From Podarcis bocagei (Eukaryota): DNA of 64,000 bases. Positions 2,790 to 44,981 of this stretch are shown one piece after another. The number at the start of each line of letters is the position of its first letter. The first letter of the stretch is position 1. The DNA is taken from assembly GCA_964188305.1 (NCBI GenBank), contig OZ076896.1; one strand, written 5' to 3'. The notes beneath the pieces were generated by a model. It was not told the origin of the DNA and searched no databases. It saw only the letters and a program-made list of their open reading frames with translations. Made by a program: the position numbers and the translations under genes.

Positions 2790-2936
2790 TATCTGAAATT
2801 TCATGCATATTAGTTAATATCTTGACCCTGCTCCACTGAATTGAAATTTCAGCCTTCACGACATAGGAAAACGGCCAAGTAAACAGCTATTTTTGTGGAG
2901 GAGAGAGGCAATGTTGTATAATATAATTCCACTTAC

Positions 2937-3083
2937 CTCCTTAAATGACTGGAGAAGGTTACTACCAGAAACTGATAATGTGATGTCTATATGGTGCATT
3001 ATAAAAAGTGGCTCTTCCTGGGTTTGGTAAGGAAAACAGGCTAGATTGTCTGCTATGTACAAAAGCTGATTCACCTCCGTTTT
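2937..3083 (-). CDS. NIPBL: NIPBL exon 43
   Basis: KTEVNQLLYIADNLACFPYQTQEEPLFIMHHIDITLSVSGSNLLQSFKE; 147 nt. Confidence 0.96.
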
Positions 3084-3827
3084 CTGTGGAAGTAGAAGAA
3101 AATAATAACAGACAAACACACATATACAATCATTTCTGTGCTCAATGAGCTCCATGCCACATTCTTGCTCCTTGAATACAGTATCCAGTGAGTTCCACCC
3201 AACATTTTTCTGGGGAGGGGGGATTTCCAAGTGTGACATCGCGTGTGCCGCAAGGCCCACAACCATTGCAAGACCTGGCCCCTCAAGATTGGTAGGCTCA
3301 GCCCTGTCCCAATAGATTCTTTGGGTGGGGGGTGGCTGAAGACATCTCAGCCCTATAGAGTTGGCACATTTAGACGGCATGGAGGAGATTCCGTTGTGCA
3401 AAGGCAAAGTAGTGGATTCCTACTACTTTGAATACAAACCATTATGCCTATTCCAAGTTATGAGCATGAAAAGCTCTTGCAATTGTAGCCACTGAAACAT
3501 CACAGAAGGAATGGATTCTGTCTCCTGGTGCCTCTACCCACTCCAACTATAAATACAGGGGCTGTGCCAAAAAAAACATAGAGCTCTTTTGGCATTGGAA
3601 GGAAGCTAAGATGAACCAGGAAAGCCACAAAACATTCTGGGAAGAGAGAGGGATGGGTTTCACTCCTGTCAAGGAGAAGAAGTGAAAACTCAAATCTGAC
3701 CAAGCAACTGCCTTGTTAACCCTAAGGATGGAATCCCGCATTTAGGAAAACCTATAAATATTATTGAATCAAGTTTAGCACTGTGTAGGGGGAATGCAAC
3801 TTCATTTTTGTTAGCAATTCTCCAGGC

Positions 3828-25111: not shown

Positions 25112-25294
25112 CTAGTAAATTTTAAAACAAGATACATTTTTTAGAAATTCAGCACAACGCAACCATATTAGATATAAAGTTTCTCCTCAACAAGTTCATA
25201 TATTTCTCTTATCTCCCAAGATGAAATACAGTGGTACCTCGGGTTACAAACACCTCAGGTTACAAACTCTACTAACCCAGAAGTAGTACCTTGG

Positions 25295-25702
25295 TGTCAG
25301 GGAACTGCCATCAGAGCATCAGGTGGTGGAGGGACTCAGGCAGGATGAAAGAGACTCAACTGCTGAAGCAGGGACCAGCAGGGGGAGGAGTGGGTCTCTG
25401 AGGGAATGCGAGCAGGAGGGAGGGCTCAGGGAGGCTTCCAGCGAAAACAGTGGGGAGGTATCGGAGTCTCCCATAGGGAGACCCATACCTCGCAGGAAAC
25501 TGTCACGCCGTGAGTCCAGGAGACGCGTTTCCGTTAAGGAACTTCTTTGTTGGAAACGCTTCCGCAGACAGCCACTGTCGGACTCTACTAGTGACTAGAG
25601 CAGACATGTCTGAGGAGCTCCGTCACACACGGAGGTTTGTGGGGGCGCACAAACTCTGAGGGAGCACGTTTTCACGCACAAGCAGCTAATCAAACCCTCA
25701 CA
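25295..25702 (+). repeat. 5' LTR
   Basis: TGTCAGGG...CCCTCACA; direct repeat of 30357-30764. Confidence 0.97.
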
Positions 25703-25747: not shown

Positions 25748-26761
25748 ATGAGCGAACCAACCGGAACCGGAGGAGCAGGGGCTGGAGCTGGTCCAAGCTT
25801 GGAAGATAGATACCGAGCGTTGGAGGTTCAACTGGCCCTGCAGACGGCGAGGCTGGAGGAGAGAAGGGCTCAGGATGCAGACAAGAAGGGGAGAGCCACT
25901 CAATTCCCCAGAAAGGTACCAGGATTGGTGCAGAAATTTGGGGGGGACCCCAAGGACTACCATGCTTTTAGGACAGAGATGCAATATGCCCTTAATGTGC
26001 AGTTCGATGAGTTCCCTGATGAGGAATCGCGAGTTGCTTTTGTAATTGGGCATCTTGAGAAAGGGGCTAGAGACTGGGTGCGACCCCTAATGGCAACGCA
26101 CAATGACATACTAAAGGACACAATGAAGTTCTTTCGTGCAATGGATATCATGTTTTCCAGCGATATTGAGGAAGGGGTGGTGCGCAGACAGCTAATGGCT
26201 TGTAAGCAGGGGAGTCGATCTGTCCGTGAATATTGGACTGAGTTTACCATGCTGATTCACAGACTGAGTTGGGATTTATCGGCGGCACCCGTTCAAATGC
26301 TATTTGAAGAAGGTCTTTCTTCGGGGGTGAAAGACGAGCTGGCACGGAGCCCCAGGGCGGAGTCTATGGATCAGCTGACCAAATCTGCGCTGACCATAGG
26401 AGCGCGGCAGGAGGCAAGAGCCTTGGAGAGGCGGGAAGGGAGAGGGGAACGTTGGAAGGAGTTCCGCATTCCAGACATTCCTGAGCCAGCTTTCCCGCCG
26501 GCAGAGCCGATGGAAATCGGAACAGCGCGCGCGCGCGCATTTTCAAAAACCAGCGAGGGAGCTAAGAAGGAGGGAAAGGGCCCCCGGAAATGCTATCTCT
26601 GCCAACAGCCAGGCCACTTTGCCAGAGTCTGCCCCCAGAGGAAGGAATGGCAAGGGATGGTGGGAGCTGTTGAGGGGGGAGAAGAAGGGGGAGCGGAGCA
26701 GGTAAAAGCCAACGCCTGGTTGCCACAATTGGGGCACTGCAGCCAGGCCAAAGAGCAGTGA
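25748..26761 (+). CDS. gag: Gag (capsid-like domain plus CCHC zinc knuckle)
   Basis: ATG at 25748; retrotransposon Gag features (QGSRSVREYWTEF, EPMEIG); CYLCQQPGHFARVC = CX2CX4HX4C. Confidence 0.93.
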   Translation: MSEPTGTGGAGAGAGPSLEDRYRALEVQLALQTARLEERRAQDADKKGRATQFPRKVPGLVQKFGGDPKDYHAFRTEMQYALNVQFDEFPDEESRVAFVIGHLEKGARDWVRPLMATHNDILKDTMKFFRAMDIMFSSDIEEGVVRRQLMACKQGSRSVREYWTEFTMLIHRLSWDLSAAPVQMLFEEGLSSGVKDELARSPRAESMDQLTKSALTIGARQEARALERREGRGERWKEFRIPDIPEPAFPPAEPMEIGTARARAFSKTSEGAKKEGKGPRKCYLCQQPGHFARVCPQRKEWQGMVGAVEGGEEGGAEQVKANAWLPQLGHCSQAKEQ

Positions 26762-26769
26762 AAGTGCCC
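26701..26769 (+). promoter_or_regulatory. -1 ribosomal frameshift signal (slippery heptamer plus pseudoknot)
   Basis: G_GTA_AAA, 6-nt spacer, stem 1 = 26714-26723/26739-26748, stem 2 = 26732-26738/26763-26769. Confidence 0.78.
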
Positions 26770-29700
26770 GTGCCAGAAGCTCCTCGACCTGCTCTAGTGA
26801 TTGAAGTGTCGCTAGAGCTGCAGAATGGGCACCCCCTAAAAATAAAGGCGCTATTGGACTCAGGCAGCTCCTGCAATTTTATGAGCAAGGAGTTTGTTGC
26901 TGAACACCAGATACAGACCATCCCTTTAAGCAACCCCCTGCAGGTGACCACGATTGATGGCAGGGAGTTGTTGGGAGGAGGAGTCCGCTTGCAGACTGTC
27001 CCAATGATAATGAGGGTGGCAAGGCACACAGAACTGATAGCGTTTAATGTGGCCACCCTGGGAGGCGCTCCCATTATTTTGGGAATGAGCTGGCTAGCTC
27101 TACATGATCCGCTGGTTGGCTGGCATCAAAGAGTGGTGTCCTTTGGTTCAGCACATTGCCTAGAACACTGCAAAGGGGAGAAGGGTTCAGTAGGGGCCCA
27201 AGCCACCCTAGCAGGGACTGAAGTAATGGGAAAGGTGAAGGTACCACCACAGTATGCAGATCTCAGCGACGTGTTCAGCGAGAAGGAAGCTGACCAACTA
27301 CCACCTCATAGACCCTTTGATTGTCAGATCAATTTACTCCCTGGAGCACAGCTTCCCGTGGGCAAGTTGTATGCCATGTCAGACAGGGAAATGCAGGAGT
27401 TGCGAGGGTTCATTGACAAGAACCTGAAGAGAGGCTTCATCAGAGAGTCCAAAGCAGCAGGGGGGAGCCCAGTGTTCTTTGTGGACAAAAAAAATGCGGA
27501 CAAGCCGAGACTTGTATGTGATTTTAGGCGGCTGAATGCAGTGACTGAACCGGTGGCGTTCCCTATGCCCAGAATTGATGATATTTTGACCATGGTGAGG
27601 AAGGGAAAGATTTTCACAAAGCTGGATCTAAGGGGGGCGTACAACCTGATACGCATAAGGAAAGGGGATGAATGGAAAACCACCATGTTTACCCCTTTGG
27701 GGGCGTTTGAATACCTCGTTATGCCATTTGGATTACAAGCAGGCTCCGCGTGTTTTCAATCTTTTATGAACCACGTGCTGGGCCCTTTGCTCTACAAGAA
27801 TTGCGTTGCCTTTCTAGATGATGTGTTGGTGTATTCTGAGAATGAGGAGCAACATGTGAGAGACGTCAGAGAAGTGTTGAGCAGACTGCAAGCCAACAGG
27901 CTGTGGGTCAAACTGGAGAAGTGTCGGTTCCATACCAAGGAGGTGGAATTCCTGGGGTACCGCCTGTCAGACAAGGGATTGGCCATGGATCCCGGCAAGG
28001 TACAGGCAGTGCTGGAATGGAAAACACCCAAAACCAAGAAGGATGTGCAGAGGTTCCTAGGGTTTGGAAACTTTTATCGTAAGTTCATCCGCAACTTCGC
28101 CCATCTGACGGCGCCCATCACTGACTGTCTCAGCAGTAAGAAGAAGTTTGTATGGACGGCGGAGGCGGGGCGAGCGTTTGAGGAACTGAAAAGGGCCTTC
28201 GCCTCTGAAGAACAACTTCTGCATGTGGATTTACGAAAGAAGCTAAGGGTTGAAACAGACGCATCTGACAGAGCCATAGGGGCGGTGCTTCTTCTGCAGC
28301 CGGGGAAGGAGGAGTCGGAGTGGCGTCCGTGTGCCTTCTTCTCGCGGAAGCTGAACAAATCCGAGAGGAACTACACGGTGTACGACCGAGAACTGCTTGC
28401 TATTCATGAGGCGTTCCGGAGATGGAGGCATCTGCTAGTTGGTGCACAACATAAAGTGCAAGTGTGCACGGACCATAAAAATCTAGAGTACTGGAGAACG
28501 GCGCGAGTGCTCAACCAAAGGCAGTTGAGATGGGCCCAAGAGTTCTCCAAATTTAACTTTGAGATTTGTTATGTGCCAGGCCCAGAGAATGTTAGGGCGG
28601 ACGCTCTCTCACGCAAGCCTGAATATTTGGAGGGGGAGGGAGCACCCGAAGAAACCCATATCATTCCAGAGGACCGCTGGGTGTGTGGGGCGACTTTGGT
28701 GGGGCAAAGGGAATTGGTAGAGGGTACGGTGCAGGATGCATACGCCCAGGGGAAACTCAGGGATCTCAGAGGGGAGGAAGACAAACCCGGTGGTTTTGAG
28801 GAGAGAAATGGGGCATTGTATTATAAGGGAGCGTTATATATACCTGAAGGGGAATTGAGGGAGAAAGTACTCAAGCAGCTGCACGATAGCCCCACAGCAG
28901 GGCACTTTGGGCAACACAAAACCATGTGGCTGGTTACCAGGGAATTTTGGTGGCCCAAGGTCAGGGAAGATGTGCGGGAGTATGTGAGAGGGTGTGAACA
29001 ATGCCAAAGAGCCAAGGGGGAGAGGCAGGCGCCGGCTGGTTTATTAGAACCACTGCCCACACCTGAGAGACCGTGGGAAGCAGTGGCAATAGATTTCATG
29101 ACTGATCTGCCAAGGTCTAGAGGGAAAACAGCCATCATGGTTGTAGTAGACCTGTTAACTAAAATGGCCCACTTCATAGCCTGCTCACATGCGGTTACAG
29201 CAGAAGAAACCGCCAAATTGTTTGTAGAGAATGTGTTTAGGTTGCATGGCGCCCCCTTGAGGGTGGTTTCAGACCGAGGGAAACAATTTACTTCCAGGTT
29301 CTGGAGGAAGCTCATGAGCTTACTGCATGTAGAGGTTAATTTCTCGACGGCCCGTCATCCTGAAACCAACGGGCAGGCGGAAAGAGCAAATGGGGTTCTC
29401 CAACAATATTTGAGGTGTTATGTTAATGACAGAGAGAATGATTGGGTGGAGAAGCTGGCGTTGGCAGAATTTGCCTACAACAATGCAGAGAACGTGTCCA
29501 CGGGGATGAGCCCCTTTTTGGCTAATCACGGGTGCCATCCCAGAGCCTTCCCAGGGGGGGAGGGGGAGAACTGGAGCGTTCCAGCTGCAGAACAGTTCGT
29601 GGAAGAAATGGAAGCGATCCATCGCCAGCTCCAACTCAACTTAAACAGGGCTAAGGAGGAATATAAGAGGCAAGCAGACAAAAACAGAAGGGAAGGTGAA

Positions 29701-30660
29701 AGCATCAGGGTGGGGGACCAGGTGTGGCTGTCAACCCAAGGGTTGCCATTCAAAGGAGGTTGTAAGAAATTAAGACCCAAAAGGCTGGGTCCGTTTGAAG
29801 TCATACAGCAGGTCAATCCAGTGGCTTTCAGGCTCCGGTTACCGAACCACATGAAGCTGCACCCAGTTTTTCACAGGTCGTTGCTGTCACCGTATAGAGG
29901 AGACAGTGAGGGGAGGGTCACTAGGGGACCAGCAATGGAGGAGAAGGAACACAGCTACCATGTAGCGGAGATCCTCGATTCCAGGTGGAAGGGAGATCAA
30001 GTAGAGTATTTGGTAATGTGGGAAGGGGAACCGGAGTCGGAAAACACCTGGGTTAGGGCAGAGGATGTCAATGACGAGGTTTTAATAGAGACTTTTCATC
30101 AGAGGTTCCCACGTAAACCTCAGCCTGTAGCGAGGTTCCGAAGGGAATACTTTGCCACCACCGACGAGGAAGAGGAGTTGGAGGGGTTCCCAGATTCTGA
30201 AGAGGAGGAGGATTCAGCTGGCCAGGACGACGATCGATGGAGAGAATTGTTCGAGACGTCAGAAGATGAGGAAGATTCGTTTCGGGGTTTTAGCCCTTCA
30301 CCTCCCAGGGGGGAGGAATTGGGAGGGGGTGAGGGGGGCCCTGGAGGGGAGGTGGATGTCAGGGAACTGCCATCAGAGCATCAGGTGGTGGAGGGACTCA
30401 GGCAGGATGAAAGAGACTCAACTGCTGAAGCAGGGACCAGCAGGGGGAGGAGTGGGTCTCTGAGGGAATGCGAGCAGGAGGGAGGGCTCAGGGAGGCTTC
30501 CAGCGAAAACAGTGGGGAGGTATCGGAGTCTCCCATAGGGAGACCCATACCTCGCAGGAAACTGTCACGCCGTGAGTCCAGGAGACGCGTTTCCGTTAAG
30601 GAACTTCTTTGTTGGAAACGCTTCCGCAGACAGCCACTGTCGGACTCTACTAGTGACTAG
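26758..30660 (+). CDS. pol: Pol polyprotein (PR-RT-RNase H-integrase-chromodomain), -1 frame to gag, probably entered by frameshift near 26707
   Basis: LLDSGS protease; MPFGL and FLDD RT motifs; ETDASD, DHKNL, ADALSR RNase H; HHCC, D,D35E and GPF integrase motifs; chromodomain; frame open from 26674 with no stops. Confidence 0.96.
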   Translation: MKVPVPEAPRPALVIEVSLELQNGHPLKIKALLDSGSSCNFMSKEFVAEHQIQTIPLSNPLQVTTIDGRELLGGGVRLQTVPMIMRVARHTELIAFNVATLGGAPIILGMSWLALHDPLVGWHQRVVSFGSAHCLEHCKGEKGSVGAQATLAGTEVMGKVKVPPQYADLSDVFSEKEADQLPPHRPFDCQINLLPGAQLPVGKLYAMSDREMQELRGFIDKNLKRGFIRESKAAGGSPVFFVDKKNADKPRLVCDFRRLNAVTEPVAFPMPRIDDILTMVRKGKIFTKLDLRGAYNLIRIRKGDEWKTTMFTPLGAFEYLVMPFGLQAGSACFQSFMNHVLGPLLYKNCVAFLDDVLVYSENEEQHVRDVREVLSRLQANRLWVKLEKCRFHTKEVEFLGYRLSDKGLAMDPGKVQAVLEWKTPKTKKDVQRFLGFGNFYRKFIRNFAHLTAPITDCLSSKKKFVWTAEAGRAFEELKRAFASEEQLLHVDLRKKLRVETDASDRAIGAVLLLQPGKEESEWRPCAFFSRKLNKSERNYTVYDRELLAIHEAFRRWRHLLVGAQHKVQVCTDHKNLEYWRTARVLNQRQLRWAQEFSKFNFEICYVPGPENVRADALSRKPEYLEGEGAPEETHIIPEDRWVCGATLVGQRELVEGTVQDAYAQGKLRDLRGEEDKPGGFEERNGALYYKGALYIPEGELREKVLKQLHDSPTAGHFGQHKTMWLVTREFWWPKVREDVREYVRGCEQCQRAKGERQAPAGLLEPLPTPERPWEAVAIDFMTDLPRSRGKTAIMVVVDLLTKMAHFIACSHAVTAEETAKLFVENVFRLHGAPLRVVSDRGKQFTSRFWRKLMSLLHVEVNFSTARHPETNGQAERANGVLQQYLRCYVNDRENDWVEKLALAEFAYNNAENVSTGMSPFLANHGCHPRAFPGGEGENWSVPAAEQFVEEMEAIHRQLQLNLNRAKEEYKRQADKNRREGESIRVGDQVWLSTQGLPFKGGCKKLRPKRLGPFEVIQQVNPVAFRLRLPNHMKLHPVFHRSLLSPYRGDSEGRVTRGPAMEEKEHSYHVAEILDSRWKGDQVEYLVMWEGEPESENTWVRAEDVNDEVLIETFHQRFPRKPQPVARFRREYFATTDEEEELEGFPDSEEEEDSAGQDDDRWRELFETSEDEEDSFRGFSPSPPRGEELGGGEGGPGGEVDVRELPSEHQVVEGLRQDERDSTAEAGTSRGRSGSLRECEQEGGLREASSENSGEVSESPIGRPIPRRKLSRRESRRRVSVKELLCWKRFRRQPLSDSTSD
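30343..30356 (+). promoter_or_regulatory. Polypurine tract
   Basis: GGAGGGGAGGTGGA immediately before the 3' LTR TG. Confidence 0.85.
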
Positions 30661-30764
30661 AGCAGACATGTCTGAGGAGCTCCGTCACACACGGAGGTTT
30701 GTGGGGGCGCACAAACTCTGAGGGAGCACGTTTTCACGCACAAGCAGCTAATCAAACCCTCACA
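30357..30764 (+). repeat. 3' LTR
   Basis: No differences from the 5' LTR seen on visual alignment. Confidence 0.97.
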
Positions 30765-31058
30765 CTTGGGTTAAGAATTTTGCCCTAGGATGAGAACAGA
30801 ATCGCGCGTCGGCAGCGGGAGGCCCTACTAGCTAAAGTGGTACCTCAGGTTAAGAACGGTTTCAGGTTAAGAACGGACCTCCGGAACGAATTAAGTTTGT
30901 AACCAGAGGTACCACTGTATAGTCAACCAAGTTGACTATAATAAATCAAGTTGATTGTATGTATTGTATGTATGAGAGGAGAGAGACCTTCTGAAGGGAA
31001 CACTTAACGAAGCTTTTACACCATTAAGTATGCAAATTAAATTTACTCAAATCAATTA

Positions 31059-43388: not shown

Positions 43389-43472
43389 GAAAAACCCTCT
43401 CTACCAAAATTAAAATTTAGAATAAAACACACCACAATACTAAACATAATGGATAAAAACTTGAAAACTTAC

Positions 43473-44981
43473 CTTTGTTTGATCTGGATGACTTGTTTTT
43501 GTTAGGTTTAAAACAAGAGCTTTTAGATTTGTCTTCTCTATCCTTAATAATTTTTTGTACATCATCCAAAGAAAGCTTCTGCAGAACAACAACTGGTTTA
43601 GCTCCTTTATTTAGATCCTCCACAAGCCCAATCTTCTCAACTTTGTCCTTCGGTTCACCCTTAATTTCTGATTTCCTTGCTTCGTGCATGACATTACCAT
43701 CTTTATCACGTTTGATTTTTGGAATGATAAAGTGTTTCAAAGCCCCCGATCTTCCCCCCAACAAATAACTGGGAAATTCCGCTTTATTGTCTGTGTGTGC
43801 TTTGTTACTATCCATTTTGCTCTTATTACCATCTGTCCTTCGTTCATCTTTACTGTTGTGTGATTTAAAACCCGGTCTATCTGGCCTTAATTTACCAATA
43901 TCACTTTTACTTTCTTGTTTAATACGAGGGCTGTCAGGTCTTGATCTCTGATCCCCAGATGACAGCCTATCCCGGGAGTCACCAGACTCATGCCTGTGTT
44001 TTCTGTCTAGTTTTTCAGGTTTTGTGTTATCAGATTTAATGATATATTTAGAGTCATGCTCTCCCTTACTCGAAGACCTCAAATACTCAGGTCTTCTCAG
44101 CTTGGATGAATCTCCTCTGTGTCTTTCTGATTCACCCCTGTCCTCAGATTTTTGTTTAAGGTTATCATGATCCCGTCTTAGAGAGTCAGAAATTGAACGT
44201 CCATCTGTCCTCTGTTTTAATGCATCAGGCCTTTCAGATTTCACTCTGGAAGGATCAGATTTCATGTCCATTTTATATTTAGATATATCAGGCTTCTTTT
44301 CTGAAGATGATTTACCAGAATCCCGCCTGTTTTCATGTCTGTGTTTGGGGGTTTCTGGCCTGCCTTCATTCTTCTGCTTTGGAGTTTCTGGCCTGCCTTC
44401 ATTTTTCTGTTTTGGAGTATCTGGCCTCACTTCATTTTTCTGTTTTGGAGTCTCAGGTCGTTGCCTTATATCCTGTTTGCCATTATTCTGCTTGCTCTCG
44501 TTTGGTTTCACATCCACCTGTCTACTCTCATGTTTGCTCTCATGTTTAATTTCTGCCTGCTTGCTTTCAGTGTGTTTAGTTTCTATCCGTTTACTCTCAT
44601 TTTGCTGCACTTCTGCTTGTTTGTTTTCATTGTGTTGTACTTCCACCTTTACACCTTCGGAATCTGACTTTTTCCTAGGGATGTCAGGGTGGTTTTCAGA
44701 TTTTAGTTTAAGTACTCCAATAACATCCTCTTGAGGAACAAAAACAGAACCATCGTTACACTGCTTTATCTCTTCAGGCTTTTTGATGATGTCAGAGTCC
44801 TGAGTAGCAGTTGCCTGAGAGTCCGCCCGTCCTGCTTGTTGTAGATCAATACTAACCATCAAGGCTGGCCTTGACCCATTTCCTGCAGAACCTGTCTCCT
44901 GAGAAGCTGGTTTATTTCCTCCAGTAGCACCTCCAGCCTCCTGTGGATAGGAATCTTGTTTTCGTTTCTTCAAAGGCTTAT
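43473..44981 (-). CDS. NIPBL: NIPBL exon 10 (large exon with PETPKQK repeats and PxVxL motif)
   Basis: KPLKKRKQDSYPQEAGG...KPVVVLQKL...SSRSNK; 1509 nt; AG/GT. Confidence 0.97.

What the first reader, a model, noticed from the sequence alone, without database searches (positions are those of the whole stretch)
30136..30291. Integrase tail carries two tandem acidic FxGF-type motifs resembling LEDGF-IBD/TND interaction motifs
Seen: right after the chromodomain, Pol reads FRREYFATTDEEEELEGF and then WRELFETSEDEEDSFRGF. Each is a short helix-like segment ending in a hydrophobic residue plus F, then an S/T-containing acidic linker (CK2-like sites), then (F/L)xGF. Known: this is the architecture of the IBM/TIM motifs by which JPO2/CDCA7L, IWS1, POGZ and MLL1 bind the LEDGF/p75 integrase-binding domain and related TFIIS N-terminal domains, and CK2 phosphorylation of the linker strengthens binding. 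Inference: this Gypsy integrase may mimic host TIMs to tether to LEDGF/HRP2 or elongation factors and integrate into transcribed gene bodies, convergent with lentiviral LEDGF use but through a different interface. The insertion in an intron of a broadly expressed gene is consistent but is a single case. I do not recall this being described for vertebrate chromoviruses.
Basis: partly seen in the sequence, partly recalled or inferred. Interest (0 to 1): 0.9.

Follow-up and report, generated by a model that had tools for sequence, protein, structure and literature searches.

The report
Host-like LEDGF-binding motifs in retrotransposon integrase
An intact, very young lizard Gypsy retrotransposon carries, just after its integrase chromodomain, two conserved short motifs built like the peptides host proteins use to bind the chromatin reader LEDGF/HRP2. 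This suggests, but does not prove, a new way of steering integration into active genes.

Summary
Pol residues 1127-1144 (nt 30136-30189) and 1161-1178 (nt 30238-30291) each read aromatic helix, then an 8-9-residue acidic S/T linker, then (L/F)xGF.

They lie in a disordered integrase tail of an intact chromovirus with 408-bp LTRs that are 100% identical and a 5-bp target-site duplication. The element sits antisense in a NIPBL intron.

- **Chance:** two such motifs arise in 5.5e-5 of composition-preserving shuffles. None occurs in 146 other chromodomain Pol fragments.
- **Conservation:** in 13 relatives, down to about 37% identity, the anchor residues are almost the only conserved tail positions (0.87 against 0.36 pairwise identity, p<1e-5). 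Listed variants from four other organisms are 5 synonymous and 0 non-synonymous inside the motifs.
- **Clade:** all carriers form one clade. That clade alone has lost the third aromatic-cage residue of the chromodomain.

The architecture fits the published LEDGF/HRP2-type TND-interacting motif. Binding was not tested because no TND sequence could be obtained, so the partner and the targeting role remain inference (about 0.45).

No paper in the searchable library describes this. The scan has 17 first-reader notes mentioning LEDGF in this genome; the eight shown report the same motif pair on other pieces.

The parts
25290..25294 (+). Target-site duplication CTTGG, 5' copy
   Evidence: Read directly. 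The same 5 bases flank the 3' LTR at 30765-30769.
25295..25702 (+). 5' LTR (408 bp, TG...CA)
   Evidence: Exact 408-bp repeat with 30357-30764.
25748..26761 (+). gag (capsid-like region plus CCHC zinc knuckle)
   Evidence: Pfam Retrotrans_gag and zf-CCHC; translation.
26758..30660 (+). pol ORF, 1300 codons: protease, RT, RNase H, integrase (H2C2, rve, SH3_Tf2-1), chromodomain, then the tail
29956..30105 (+). Integrase chromodomain (Pol aa 1067-1116). The third aromatic-cage residue is replaced by Glu.
   Evidence: Pfam Chromo, E 1.5e-11. Cage comparison across 151 chromodomains. Folded in AF2 with pLDDT 80-93.
30136..30189 (+). Motif 1 (Pol aa 1127-1144): helix part FRREYF, linker ATTDEEEE (8 aa), then LEGF
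   Evidence: F1127, F1132, G1143 and F1144 are near-invariant in 13 relatives. Helix predicted at aa 1125-1131 and aa 1127-1130.
30190..30237 (+). Variable acidic spacer between the motifs. It differs in length between relatives.
   Evidence: Alignments. Listed variants here are 3 synonymous and 5 non-synonymous.
30238..30291 (+). Motif 2 (Pol aa 1161-1178): helix part WRELF, linker ETSEDEEDS (9 aa), then canonical FRGF
   Evidence: W, F and F-x-G-F are invariant in all 8 relatives that cover it. Helix turn at aa 1163-1165.
30306..30356 (+). Purine-rich stretch and polypurine tract directly upstream of the 3' LTR. It lies inside the pol frame and encodes a G/E-rich segment.
   Evidence: Sequence read. 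The PPT role is inferred from position.
30357..30764 (+). 3' LTR. Its first 304 bases (30357-30660) encode the last 100 residues of Pol plus the stop codon, ending in a conserved basic stretch and an LLCWKRF motif.
   Evidence: The C-terminal motif is also present in P0001-P0005.
2859..3407 (-). ORF containing a host NIPBL exon (end of the Nipped-B_C domain)
   Evidence: Pfam PF12830, E 2.1e-9; translation.
43420..44973 (-). Large host exon with RPETPKQK repeats and a PVVVL motif, read as the big NIPBL exon
   Evidence: Translation. The assignment rests on my own knowledge of NIPBL, not on a tool hit. The atlas gave nothing.

Best explanation
The two motifs are functional short linear motifs in the disordered C-terminal tail of the integrase of a lacertid-lizard chromovirus clade. 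They copy the helix, acidic linker and FxGF architecture of host TND-interacting / IBD-binding motifs.

Proposed mechanism:
- After reverse transcription, the tail of intasome-bound integrase docks its aromatic helix and FxGF into the two hydrophobic pockets of the LEDGF/HRP2 integrase-binding domain, which is a TFIIS-N-terminal-type domain.
- The acidic linker, probably phosphorylated by CK2, lies on the basic patch between the pockets.
- LEDGF/HRP2 read H3K36me2/3 through their PWWP domain, so the intasome would be tethered to bodies of transcribed genes.
- Two motifs in tandem would give avidity, as in JPO2 and CDC7-ASK.

The clade's chromodomain has lost aromatic-cage residues. This suggests the tail motif has taken over the targeting role.

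Shown: the motifs, their disorder and nascent helices, their clade-wide conservation against variable linkers, and the cage loss. Inferred: the partner, the phosphorylation, and the effect on integration sites.
For: - **Architecture.** It fits the published TIM definition with linkers of 8 and 9 residues (sequence). It parallels the DPF3a IBM and the (S/E)xFxGF consensus, and the JIL-1 DFxGFDE motif that binds the fly LEDGF-domain protein.
- **Relatives.** Podarcis muralis and P. lilfordi proteins and two uncharacterised assemblies keep the motifs while the spacer changes length.
- **Conservation.** Alignment A3 of 13 tails shows only F1127, F1132, G1143 and F1144 near-invariant after the chromodomain, and W/F/FxGF invariant in 8 of 8 for motif 2. 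Anchor columns average 0.87 pairwise identity against 0.36 for other tail columns (0 of 100,000 permutations).
- **Protein-level selection.** Anchor codons differ synonymously between the window, L001 and L002. Variants listed from contigs of four other organism labels are 5 synonymous and 0 non-synonymous inside the motifs. In the flanking tail they are 5 and 8 (one-sided Fisher p about 0.03, my arithmetic).
- **Chance controls.**
- **Structure.** AF2 gives folded SH3 and chromo domains, tail pLDDT below 50, short helices exactly at the helix parts of both motifs, and no confident intramolecular docking.
- **Single origin.** A tree built on SH3 and chromo only puts all carriers in one clade with SH-aLRT 98. 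None of 136 other representatives has the motif.
- **Cage loss.** The third cage residue is Y or F in 141 of 151 chromodomains, but E or T in every member of this clade.
- **Insertion site.** The insertion lies in an intron of NIPBL.
Against: - No binding data or complex model was obtained. No TND/IBD sequence could be obtained.
- Motif 1 of this copy has L, or M in one relative, instead of the first F. Mutating the corresponding residue abolishes binding in DPF3a.
- In lineage B the linker is S/T-rich rather than acidic.
- One P. muralis copy (P0157) has FEEF in place of FxGF in motif 1. One contig in another organism lacks motif 2 through an in-frame 120-nt deletion.
- Profile and sequence searches of PDB chains with the motif returned no IBM peptide, though HMMER is poorly suited to such short motifs.
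- The gene-body location is a single case.
- All carriers form one clade, so the co-occurrence with cage loss is one evolutionary event.
- The anchors used in the permutation test were chosen from the TIM model.
Confidence: 0.45

Rival explanations
1. The motifs are real, selected short linear motifs, but they bind a different host partner that reads acidic-aromatic peptides. Candidates are histone H2A-H2B or H3-H4 (chaperone-like acidic tails with aromatic anchors), TFIIH p62 or Mediator-type activation-domain receptors, and FHA domains of PNKP, APLF or APTX that read CK2-phosphorylated S/T-T-D-D/E sites. The last would serve post-integration gap repair rather than targeting.
For: Conservation and disorder are equally explained. 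The TTD(E/D) start of the motif 1 linker is itself fairly conserved in lineage A, with column identity 0.71, and it resembles XRCC1/XRCC4-type CK2 sites (my knowledge). Acidic tails with aromatic residues are common histone binders. IWS1 combines histone binding with TIMs in one disordered region.
Against: The invariant residues are the G and both flanking aromatics of xGF plus the helix aromatics, at fixed spacing. The acidic or S/T residues are not invariant. Lineage B keeps F-x4-F-x8-FxGF but loses the acidic TTDE. Histone, TFIIH or FHA readers would not demand an invariant Gly.
Confidence: 0.3
2. The motifs act within the element's own machinery. The acidic-aromatic segments might fold back on the basic LTR-encoded C-terminus, the SH3 or chromo domains, or neighbouring integrase subunits. 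That could regulate intasome assembly, nuclear import or DNA binding.
For: The same tail ends in a conserved, strongly basic segment with an LLCWKRF motif. Charge complementarity makes an intramolecular switch plausible.
Against: AF2, with the family alignment, predicts no confident contact between the motifs and any folded part. The tail has pLDDT below 50. An FxGF with an invariant Gly is not needed for a purely electrostatic switch.
Confidence: 0.12
3. There is no protein-level function. The resemblance is chance in an acidic, low-complexity tail, or the conservation reflects nucleotide-level constraints near the polypurine tract or shared recent ancestry of the copies.
For: Acidic tails are low-complexity. 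All carriers are one clade. Most sequences come from one genus.
Against: Two motifs arise by chance in 5.5e-5 of shuffles. Relatives with only 37-41% identity over the SH3-chromodomain-tail region keep the anchors while the surrounding residues and spacer length change. Substitutions at and around the anchors are synonymous, which is the opposite of a nucleotide-level constraint.
Confidence: 0.05

Closest known systems
Cellular IBD-binding motifs / TND-interacting motifs (JPO2, POGZ, MLL1/KMT2A, IWS1, CDC7-ASK, MED1, DPF3a; fly JIL-1)
   Same: Disordered context. A short helix with bulky hydrophobic anchors, an acidic linker containing CK2-type S/T within the 8-16-residue range, and FxGF. The tandem duplication matches JPO2 and ASK.
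   Different: It sits on a retrotransposon integrase rather than a host transcription factor. Motif 1 of this copy has L at the first FxGF position. Binding is untested.
Lentiviral integrase-LEDGF/p75 tethering
   Same: The proposed outcome is the same: the intasome tethered through the LEDGF IBD to H3K36me3 gene bodies.
   Different: By established knowledge, lentiviruses bind the IBD with the folded catalytic-core dimer interface. Here a linear motif in a disordered tail would occupy the site used by cellular partners. It would be convergent use through another interface.
Gammaretroviral (MLV) integrase C-terminal tail binding the BET ET domain
   Same: A short peptide in the unstructured integrase C-terminus mimics host ligands of a chromatin-reader-associated domain and sets integration preference (and my knowledge).
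   Different: A different motif, a different reader (BET rather than LEDGF/HRP2) and a different chromatin target (enhancers and promoters rather than gene bodies).
Yeast LTR-retrotransposon targeting peptides (Ty5 integrase-Sir4, Ty1 integrase-AC40, Ty3 integrase-TFIIIB)
   Same: Small integrase segments tether integration to a host factor (papers listed). The Ty5 motif is phosphorylation-dependent (my knowledge).
   Different: Unrelated sequences and partners. None of them mimics a TND ligand.
Canonical chromoviruses (for example MAGGY), whose integrase chromodomain reads methylated H3
   Same: The same element type and domain order. Chromodomain-directed targeting is cited (Gao et al. 2008).
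   Different: In this clade the aromatic cage is degenerate. The third residue is E or T, the first is often lost, and W is lost in lineage B. The conserved tail motif is added.

Membership tests
LEDGF/HRP2-type TND-interacting motif (IBM/TIM) | Lies in an intrinsically disordered region | tested here: met
   AF2 pLDDT is below 50 throughout the tail, while the SH3 and chromo domains score 80-93.
LEDGF/HRP2-type TND-interacting motif (IBM/TIM) | Obligate short alpha-helix carrying bulky hydrophobic anchor residues | tested here: met
   Helices are predicted at aa 1125-1131 and at aa 1127-1130 and 1163-1165. Confidence is low, as expected for a helix that forms on binding. Anchors F1127/F1132 and W1161/F1165 are conserved.
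LEDGF/HRP2-type TND-interacting motif (IBM/TIM) | Acidic, S/T-containing linker of 8-16 residues | tested here: met
   ATTDEEEE (8 residues) and ETSEDEEDS (9 residues). Lineage B has an S/T-rich, non-acidic linker of the same length.
LEDGF/HRP2-type TND-interacting motif (IBM/TIM) | FxGF, required by all known LEDGF/HRP2 partners | tested here: met
   Motif 2 is FRGF, invariant as F-x-G-F in 8 of 8 relatives. Motif 1 is LEGF in this copy, which is not strictly met, but FVGF, FEGF, FQGF or FHGF in sister lineages.
LEDGF/HRP2-type TND-interacting motif (IBM/TIM) | CK2 phosphorylation of the linker raises affinity | not testable with these tools
   S/T-x-x-D/E consensus sites are present at T1134, T1135, T1167 and S1168 (read). 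Phosphorylation itself cannot be tested here.
LEDGF/HRP2-type TND-interacting motif (IBM/TIM) | Physical, anchor-dependent binding to a TND/IBD | not testable with these tools
PDB sequence searches with the motif were blank.
Chromovirus (Ty3/Gypsy with an integrase chromodomain) | LTRs, target-site duplication, gag, and pol in the order PR-RT-RH-IN with a C-terminal chromodomain | tested here: met
Chromovirus (Ty3/Gypsy with an integrase chromodomain) | Intact three-residue aromatic cage for methyl-lysine (group I chromodomain) | tested here: not met
   The third cage position is E here, against Y or F in 141 of 151 related chromodomains. It is a member by descent, but probably not a canonical methyl-lysine reader.

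The most novel reading that the evidence does not exclude
One clade of lizard chromoviruses gave up methyl-lysine reading by its integrase chromodomain. It evolved tandem mimics of host TND-interacting motifs instead, so that the intasome rides LEDGF/HRP2, or another TND elongation factor, into transcribed gene bodies. This would be the first retrotransposon known to use linear-motif mimicry of the LEDGF interactome. It would be an independent, mechanistically different convergence with lentiviruses.
Probability: 0.4. Interest if true: 0.85.

Novelty: new variant of a known kind. Interest (0 to 1): 0.72.

Why it matters
Integration-site choice by tethering integrase to a chromatin reader is a central theme of retrovirus and retrotransposon biology, and of vector design. 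The known cases are few: lentiviruses with LEDGF, MLV with BET, and the Ty elements.

A vertebrate LTR retrotransposon that reaches the LEDGF/HRP2 hub through the cellular-partner interface would matter for three reasons:
- It would show that this hub has been targeted at least twice, by different structural means.
- It would add a natural peptide ligand family for the IBD.
- It would offer an evolutionary example of one targeting module, the chromodomain cage, being replaced by another.

It is directly testable with peptides and with insertion-site statistics in lacertid genomes.

Tried and rejected
**Searches that returned nothing**
- phmmer of the tail and of each motif, and hmmsearch with a 13-instance motif profile (A2), against PDB chains. 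No IBM or TIM peptide came back, but HMMER is weak on such short motifs.
- A scan of JGI metagenome contigs for relatives.
- Homologue searches in three length bands. They found only Podarcis proteins and three anonymous assemblies, so cross-family breadth is limited by the lack of annotated transposon proteins.
- An atlas search for the large host exon.
- Pfam on ten more minus-strand ORFs around the insertion.

**Papers**
- The key primary papers were not held: Tesina 2015, Sharma 2018 and Cermakova 2021. Definitions were taken from the review and from two open papers.
- Literature searches linking chromoviruses or transposons to LEDGF motifs found nothing relevant.

**Not run**
- Complex prediction, because no LEDGF, HRP2 or other TND sequence was available as a session sequence or an allowed reference.

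**Considered and rejected from my own knowledge**
- Gamma-ear/GAE motifs (F-G-x-F), G3BP-binding FGDF and nucleoporin FxFG. In all three the Gly is in a different position.
- B56 LxxIxE and SUMO-interaction motifs. There is no match.

**Other**
- A nucleotide-level constraint was rejected, because the changes inside the motifs are synonymous.
- P0022, the one clade member without the motif, diverges abruptly after PADF. I read it as a frameshifted, decayed copy.
Full report
**1. What is there**

The finding lies inside a complete LTR retrotransposon on the + strand.
- Two 408-bp LTRs (25295-25702 and 30357-30764) are 100% identical.
- They start with TG and end with CA, and are flanked by a 5-bp target-site duplication, CTTGG.
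- Between them lie a gag ORF with a Retrotrans_gag region and a CCHC knuckle, and a 1300-codon pol ORF.
- Pol contains protease, reverse transcriptase, RNase H, integrase (H2C2 zinc finger, rve core, Tf2-type SH3) and a chromodomain at aa 1067-1116.

This is an intact and very young Ty3/Gypsy chromovirus. It is the only copy in the window.

The pol frame runs on through the purine-rich tract in front of the 3' LTR and for 304 bases into the LTR. The motifs lie in the unique part, between the chromodomain and that tract.

**2. The observation**

- Pol aa 1127-1144 reads FRREYFATTDEEEELEGF.
- Pol aa 1161-1178 reads WRELFETSEDEEDSFRGF.
- These are at exactly the reported coordinates.
- Each has an aromatic-rich segment, then an acidic linker of 8 or 9 residues with two S/T in CK2-type context (S/T-x-x-D/E), then (L/F)-x-G-F.

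I wrote a TIM-style pattern after seeing the motif and tested it three ways:
- Composition-preserving shuffles of the 84-residue tail give at least one match in 0.9% of trials and at least two in 5.5e-5.
- 146 other chromodomain-bearing Pol fragments (80,781 residues) give none.
- The six-frame translation of the whole window gives only these two.

**3. Relatives**

Three database searches and one exhaustive HMMER search found the following.
- Close relatives: proteins annotated from Podarcis muralis (P0001-3, P0016, P0157, P0158), one from P. lilfordi (P0156), and two anonymous assemblies (P0004 from Logan, P0005 from ENA).
- A second, more distant lineage: P0015, P0154 and P0155 from P. muralis, and P0159 from Logan.

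The host is therefore very probably a lacertid lizard. That is an inference from the best hits.

A run search found the chromodomain-plus-tail stretch in runs of at least 11 coded organism labels from 12 studies.

All relatives with an intact tail keep the motif:
- Motif 1 reads RF(R/W)xx(Y/Q/E)F, then a TTD-acidic linker, then LEGF, MEGF, FVGF or FEGF in lineage A.
- Motif 1 reads (F/Y)FDDWLF, then an S/T-rich linker of the same length, then FQGF or FHGF in lineage B.
- Motif 2 reads W-x3-F, then 9 acidic or S/T residues, then FRGF or FLGF in all eight lineage-A sequences that reach it.
- The spacer between the motifs differs in length between relatives.

In the 13-sequence alignment A3, the only near-invariant columns after the chromodomain are the four motif 1 anchors. 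In motif 2, W, F, F, G and F are invariant. Anchor columns average 0.87 pairwise identity against 0.36 for the other 52 tail columns (0 of 100,000 permutations).

**4. Selection acts on the protein**

- Anchor codons differ synonymously between the window and the two relatives for which DNA is held (TTC/TTT and GGG/GGT).
- Logan contigs of four other organism labels were laid on 29900-30400. They gave 40 listed variant positions, which I classified.

| Region | Synonymous | Non-synonymous |
|---|---|---|
| Inside the two motifs | 5 | 0 |
| Inter-motif and post-motif tail | 5 | 8 |
| Chromodomain | 11 | 5 |

- The contrast between the motifs and the flanking tail gives a one-sided Fisher p of about 0.03 (my arithmetic).
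- A further 28 variants were not shown by the tool.
- Loose ends of contigs read on into the P. lilfordi-like and P0003-like versions with GF and FRGF preserved.
- One contig carries an in-frame 120-nt deletion that removes motif 2. One P. muralis protein has FEEF in motif 1. So not every copy keeps both.

**5. Structure**

AF2 was run with the family alignments.
- It folds the SH3 and chromo domains with pLDDT 80-93.
- It leaves the whole tail below 50.
- It places short helices exactly at the helix part of motif 1 (aa 1125-1131 in one model, 1127-1130 in the other) and of motif 2 (aa 1163-1165).
- It shows no confident docking of the motifs on the folded domains.

This is the expected signature of an exposed linear motif that forms a helix on binding.

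**6. Clade and chromodomain**

A maximum-likelihood tree was built from the SH3 and chromodomain columns only, with the tail excluded.
- It places lineages A and B, plus one frameshifted copy (P0022), in a single clade with SH-aLRT 98.
- None of the other 136 representatives has the motif. A single origin followed by retention is the simplest reading.

The same clade has a degenerate aromatic cage:
- The third cage residue is Y or F in 141 of 151 chromodomains, but E or T in every clade member.
- The first cage residue is lost in most members.
- Lineage B has also lost the cage tryptophan.

This is one evolutionary event, not independent replication. It does fit a hand-over of targeting from the chromodomain to the tail.

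**7. Comparison with what is known**

The review of TFIIS N-terminal domains (PMC9987994) defines TND-interacting motifs as:
- an obligate short helix anchored by F/V/L/I;
- a flexible acidic linker of 8-16 residues, rich in S/T that CK2 phosphorylates;
- an FxGF that is optional in general, but present and essential in all known partners of LEDGF and HRP2.

It also notes that several partners carry two or three motifs.

The DPF3a motif that binds the HRP2 IBD is LFGSTSESDTSTFHGF. Its consensus is (S/E)xFxGF, binding is lost on mutation of either Phe, and phosphoserine enhances binding (PMC7337902). Motif 2 here, ELF-ETSEDEEDS-FRGF, is nearly superimposable on it.

Fly JIL-1 binds the LEDGF domain of JASPer through DFxGFDE (PMC6877644). 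The recognition mode is therefore conserved across animals.

On these criteria motif 2 is a full match. Motif 1 is a match with a conservative L-for-F change in this subfamily. Membership in the functional sense, meaning binding to a TND, could not be tested.

**8. Mechanism proposed**

The mechanism is the one set out under Best explanation: the tail motifs tether the intasome, through the LEDGF/HRP2 IBD, to transcribed gene bodies.

It would be analogous in principle to the MLV integrase tail binding the BET ET domain. It would converge in outcome with lentiviruses, which bind the same domain with a folded surface instead.

I put about 0.85-0.9 on 'a conserved functional linear motif'. I put about 0.45 on the full LEDGF/HRP2 tethering model.

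**9. Context of the insertion**

- A minus-strand ORF at 2859-3407 contains the end of the Nipped-B_C domain (Pfam, E 2.1e-9).
- A 518-codon minus-strand ORF at 43420-44973 has RPETPKQK repeats and a PVVVL motif. From my own knowledge I recognise this as the large NIPBL exon.
- The element therefore sits antisense in an intron of NIPBL, a broadly expressed gene.
- This is consistent with the model but is a single case.

**10. Prior notes and literature**

- The scan holds 17 first-reader notes mentioning LEDGF in this genome. The eight that were shown describe the same motif pair on other pieces, and none was listed as followed up.
- They show that the family is multi-copy. They are not independent evidence.
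- Full-text searches found no paper connecting chromovirus or other retrotransposon integrases with IBM or TIM motifs.

**11. Limits**

- No binding test and no complex model.
- Taxon sampling is essentially one lizard family.
- The anchors and the pattern were defined from the hypothesis.

Noticed in passing
window 29956-30105 (chromodomain): The aromatic cage is degenerate in the whole motif-bearing clade. The third cage residue is E or T instead of Y or F, the first is often N, S or H, and the cage W is R in lineage B. By contrast, 141 of 151 related chromodomains keep an aromatic residue at the third position.
   Followed up: yes
window 30357-30660 (3' LTR) and the identical 25295-25598 in the 5' LTR: Pol reads 304 bases into the LTR. 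The LTR-encoded end has a strongly basic stretch followed by an LLCWKRF-type motif and an acidic S/T terminus. It is conserved in P0001-P0005 and recognisable in lineage B (P0159). AF2 gives a small helix at LLCW. The scan also noted this as s1-356630.
   Followed up: partly
window 2859-3407 (-) and 43420-44973 (-): The host gene is NIPBL on the minus strand. The element lies antisense in one of its introns.
   Followed up: partly
P0015, P0155 and P0159 tails (lineage B), about 30 residues after motif 1: A conserved SYWWD(N/E)QPE segment follows motif 1 in lineage B. The apparent second LSGF is not conserved there (CSGV in P0159). This may be a different second motif in that lineage.
   Followed up: no
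window 30189-30310, in run X13: One contig of another organism joins 30189 to 30310. This is an in-frame 120-nt deletion that removes the spacer and motif 2, so some copies carry only motif 1.
   Followed up: no
window 29900-30400, in runs X5 and X16-X20: Small libraries that the tool guesses to be RNA hold the chromodomain-tail stretch or close relatives, in two organism labels and four studies. This may mean expression, but the RNA status is only a guess.
   Followed up: no
window 26758-26761 (gag/pol junction): pol is in the -1 frame relative to gag and overlaps its stop codon. This is consistent with frameshifting. Another first-reader note covers it (s1-356592).
   Followed up: no
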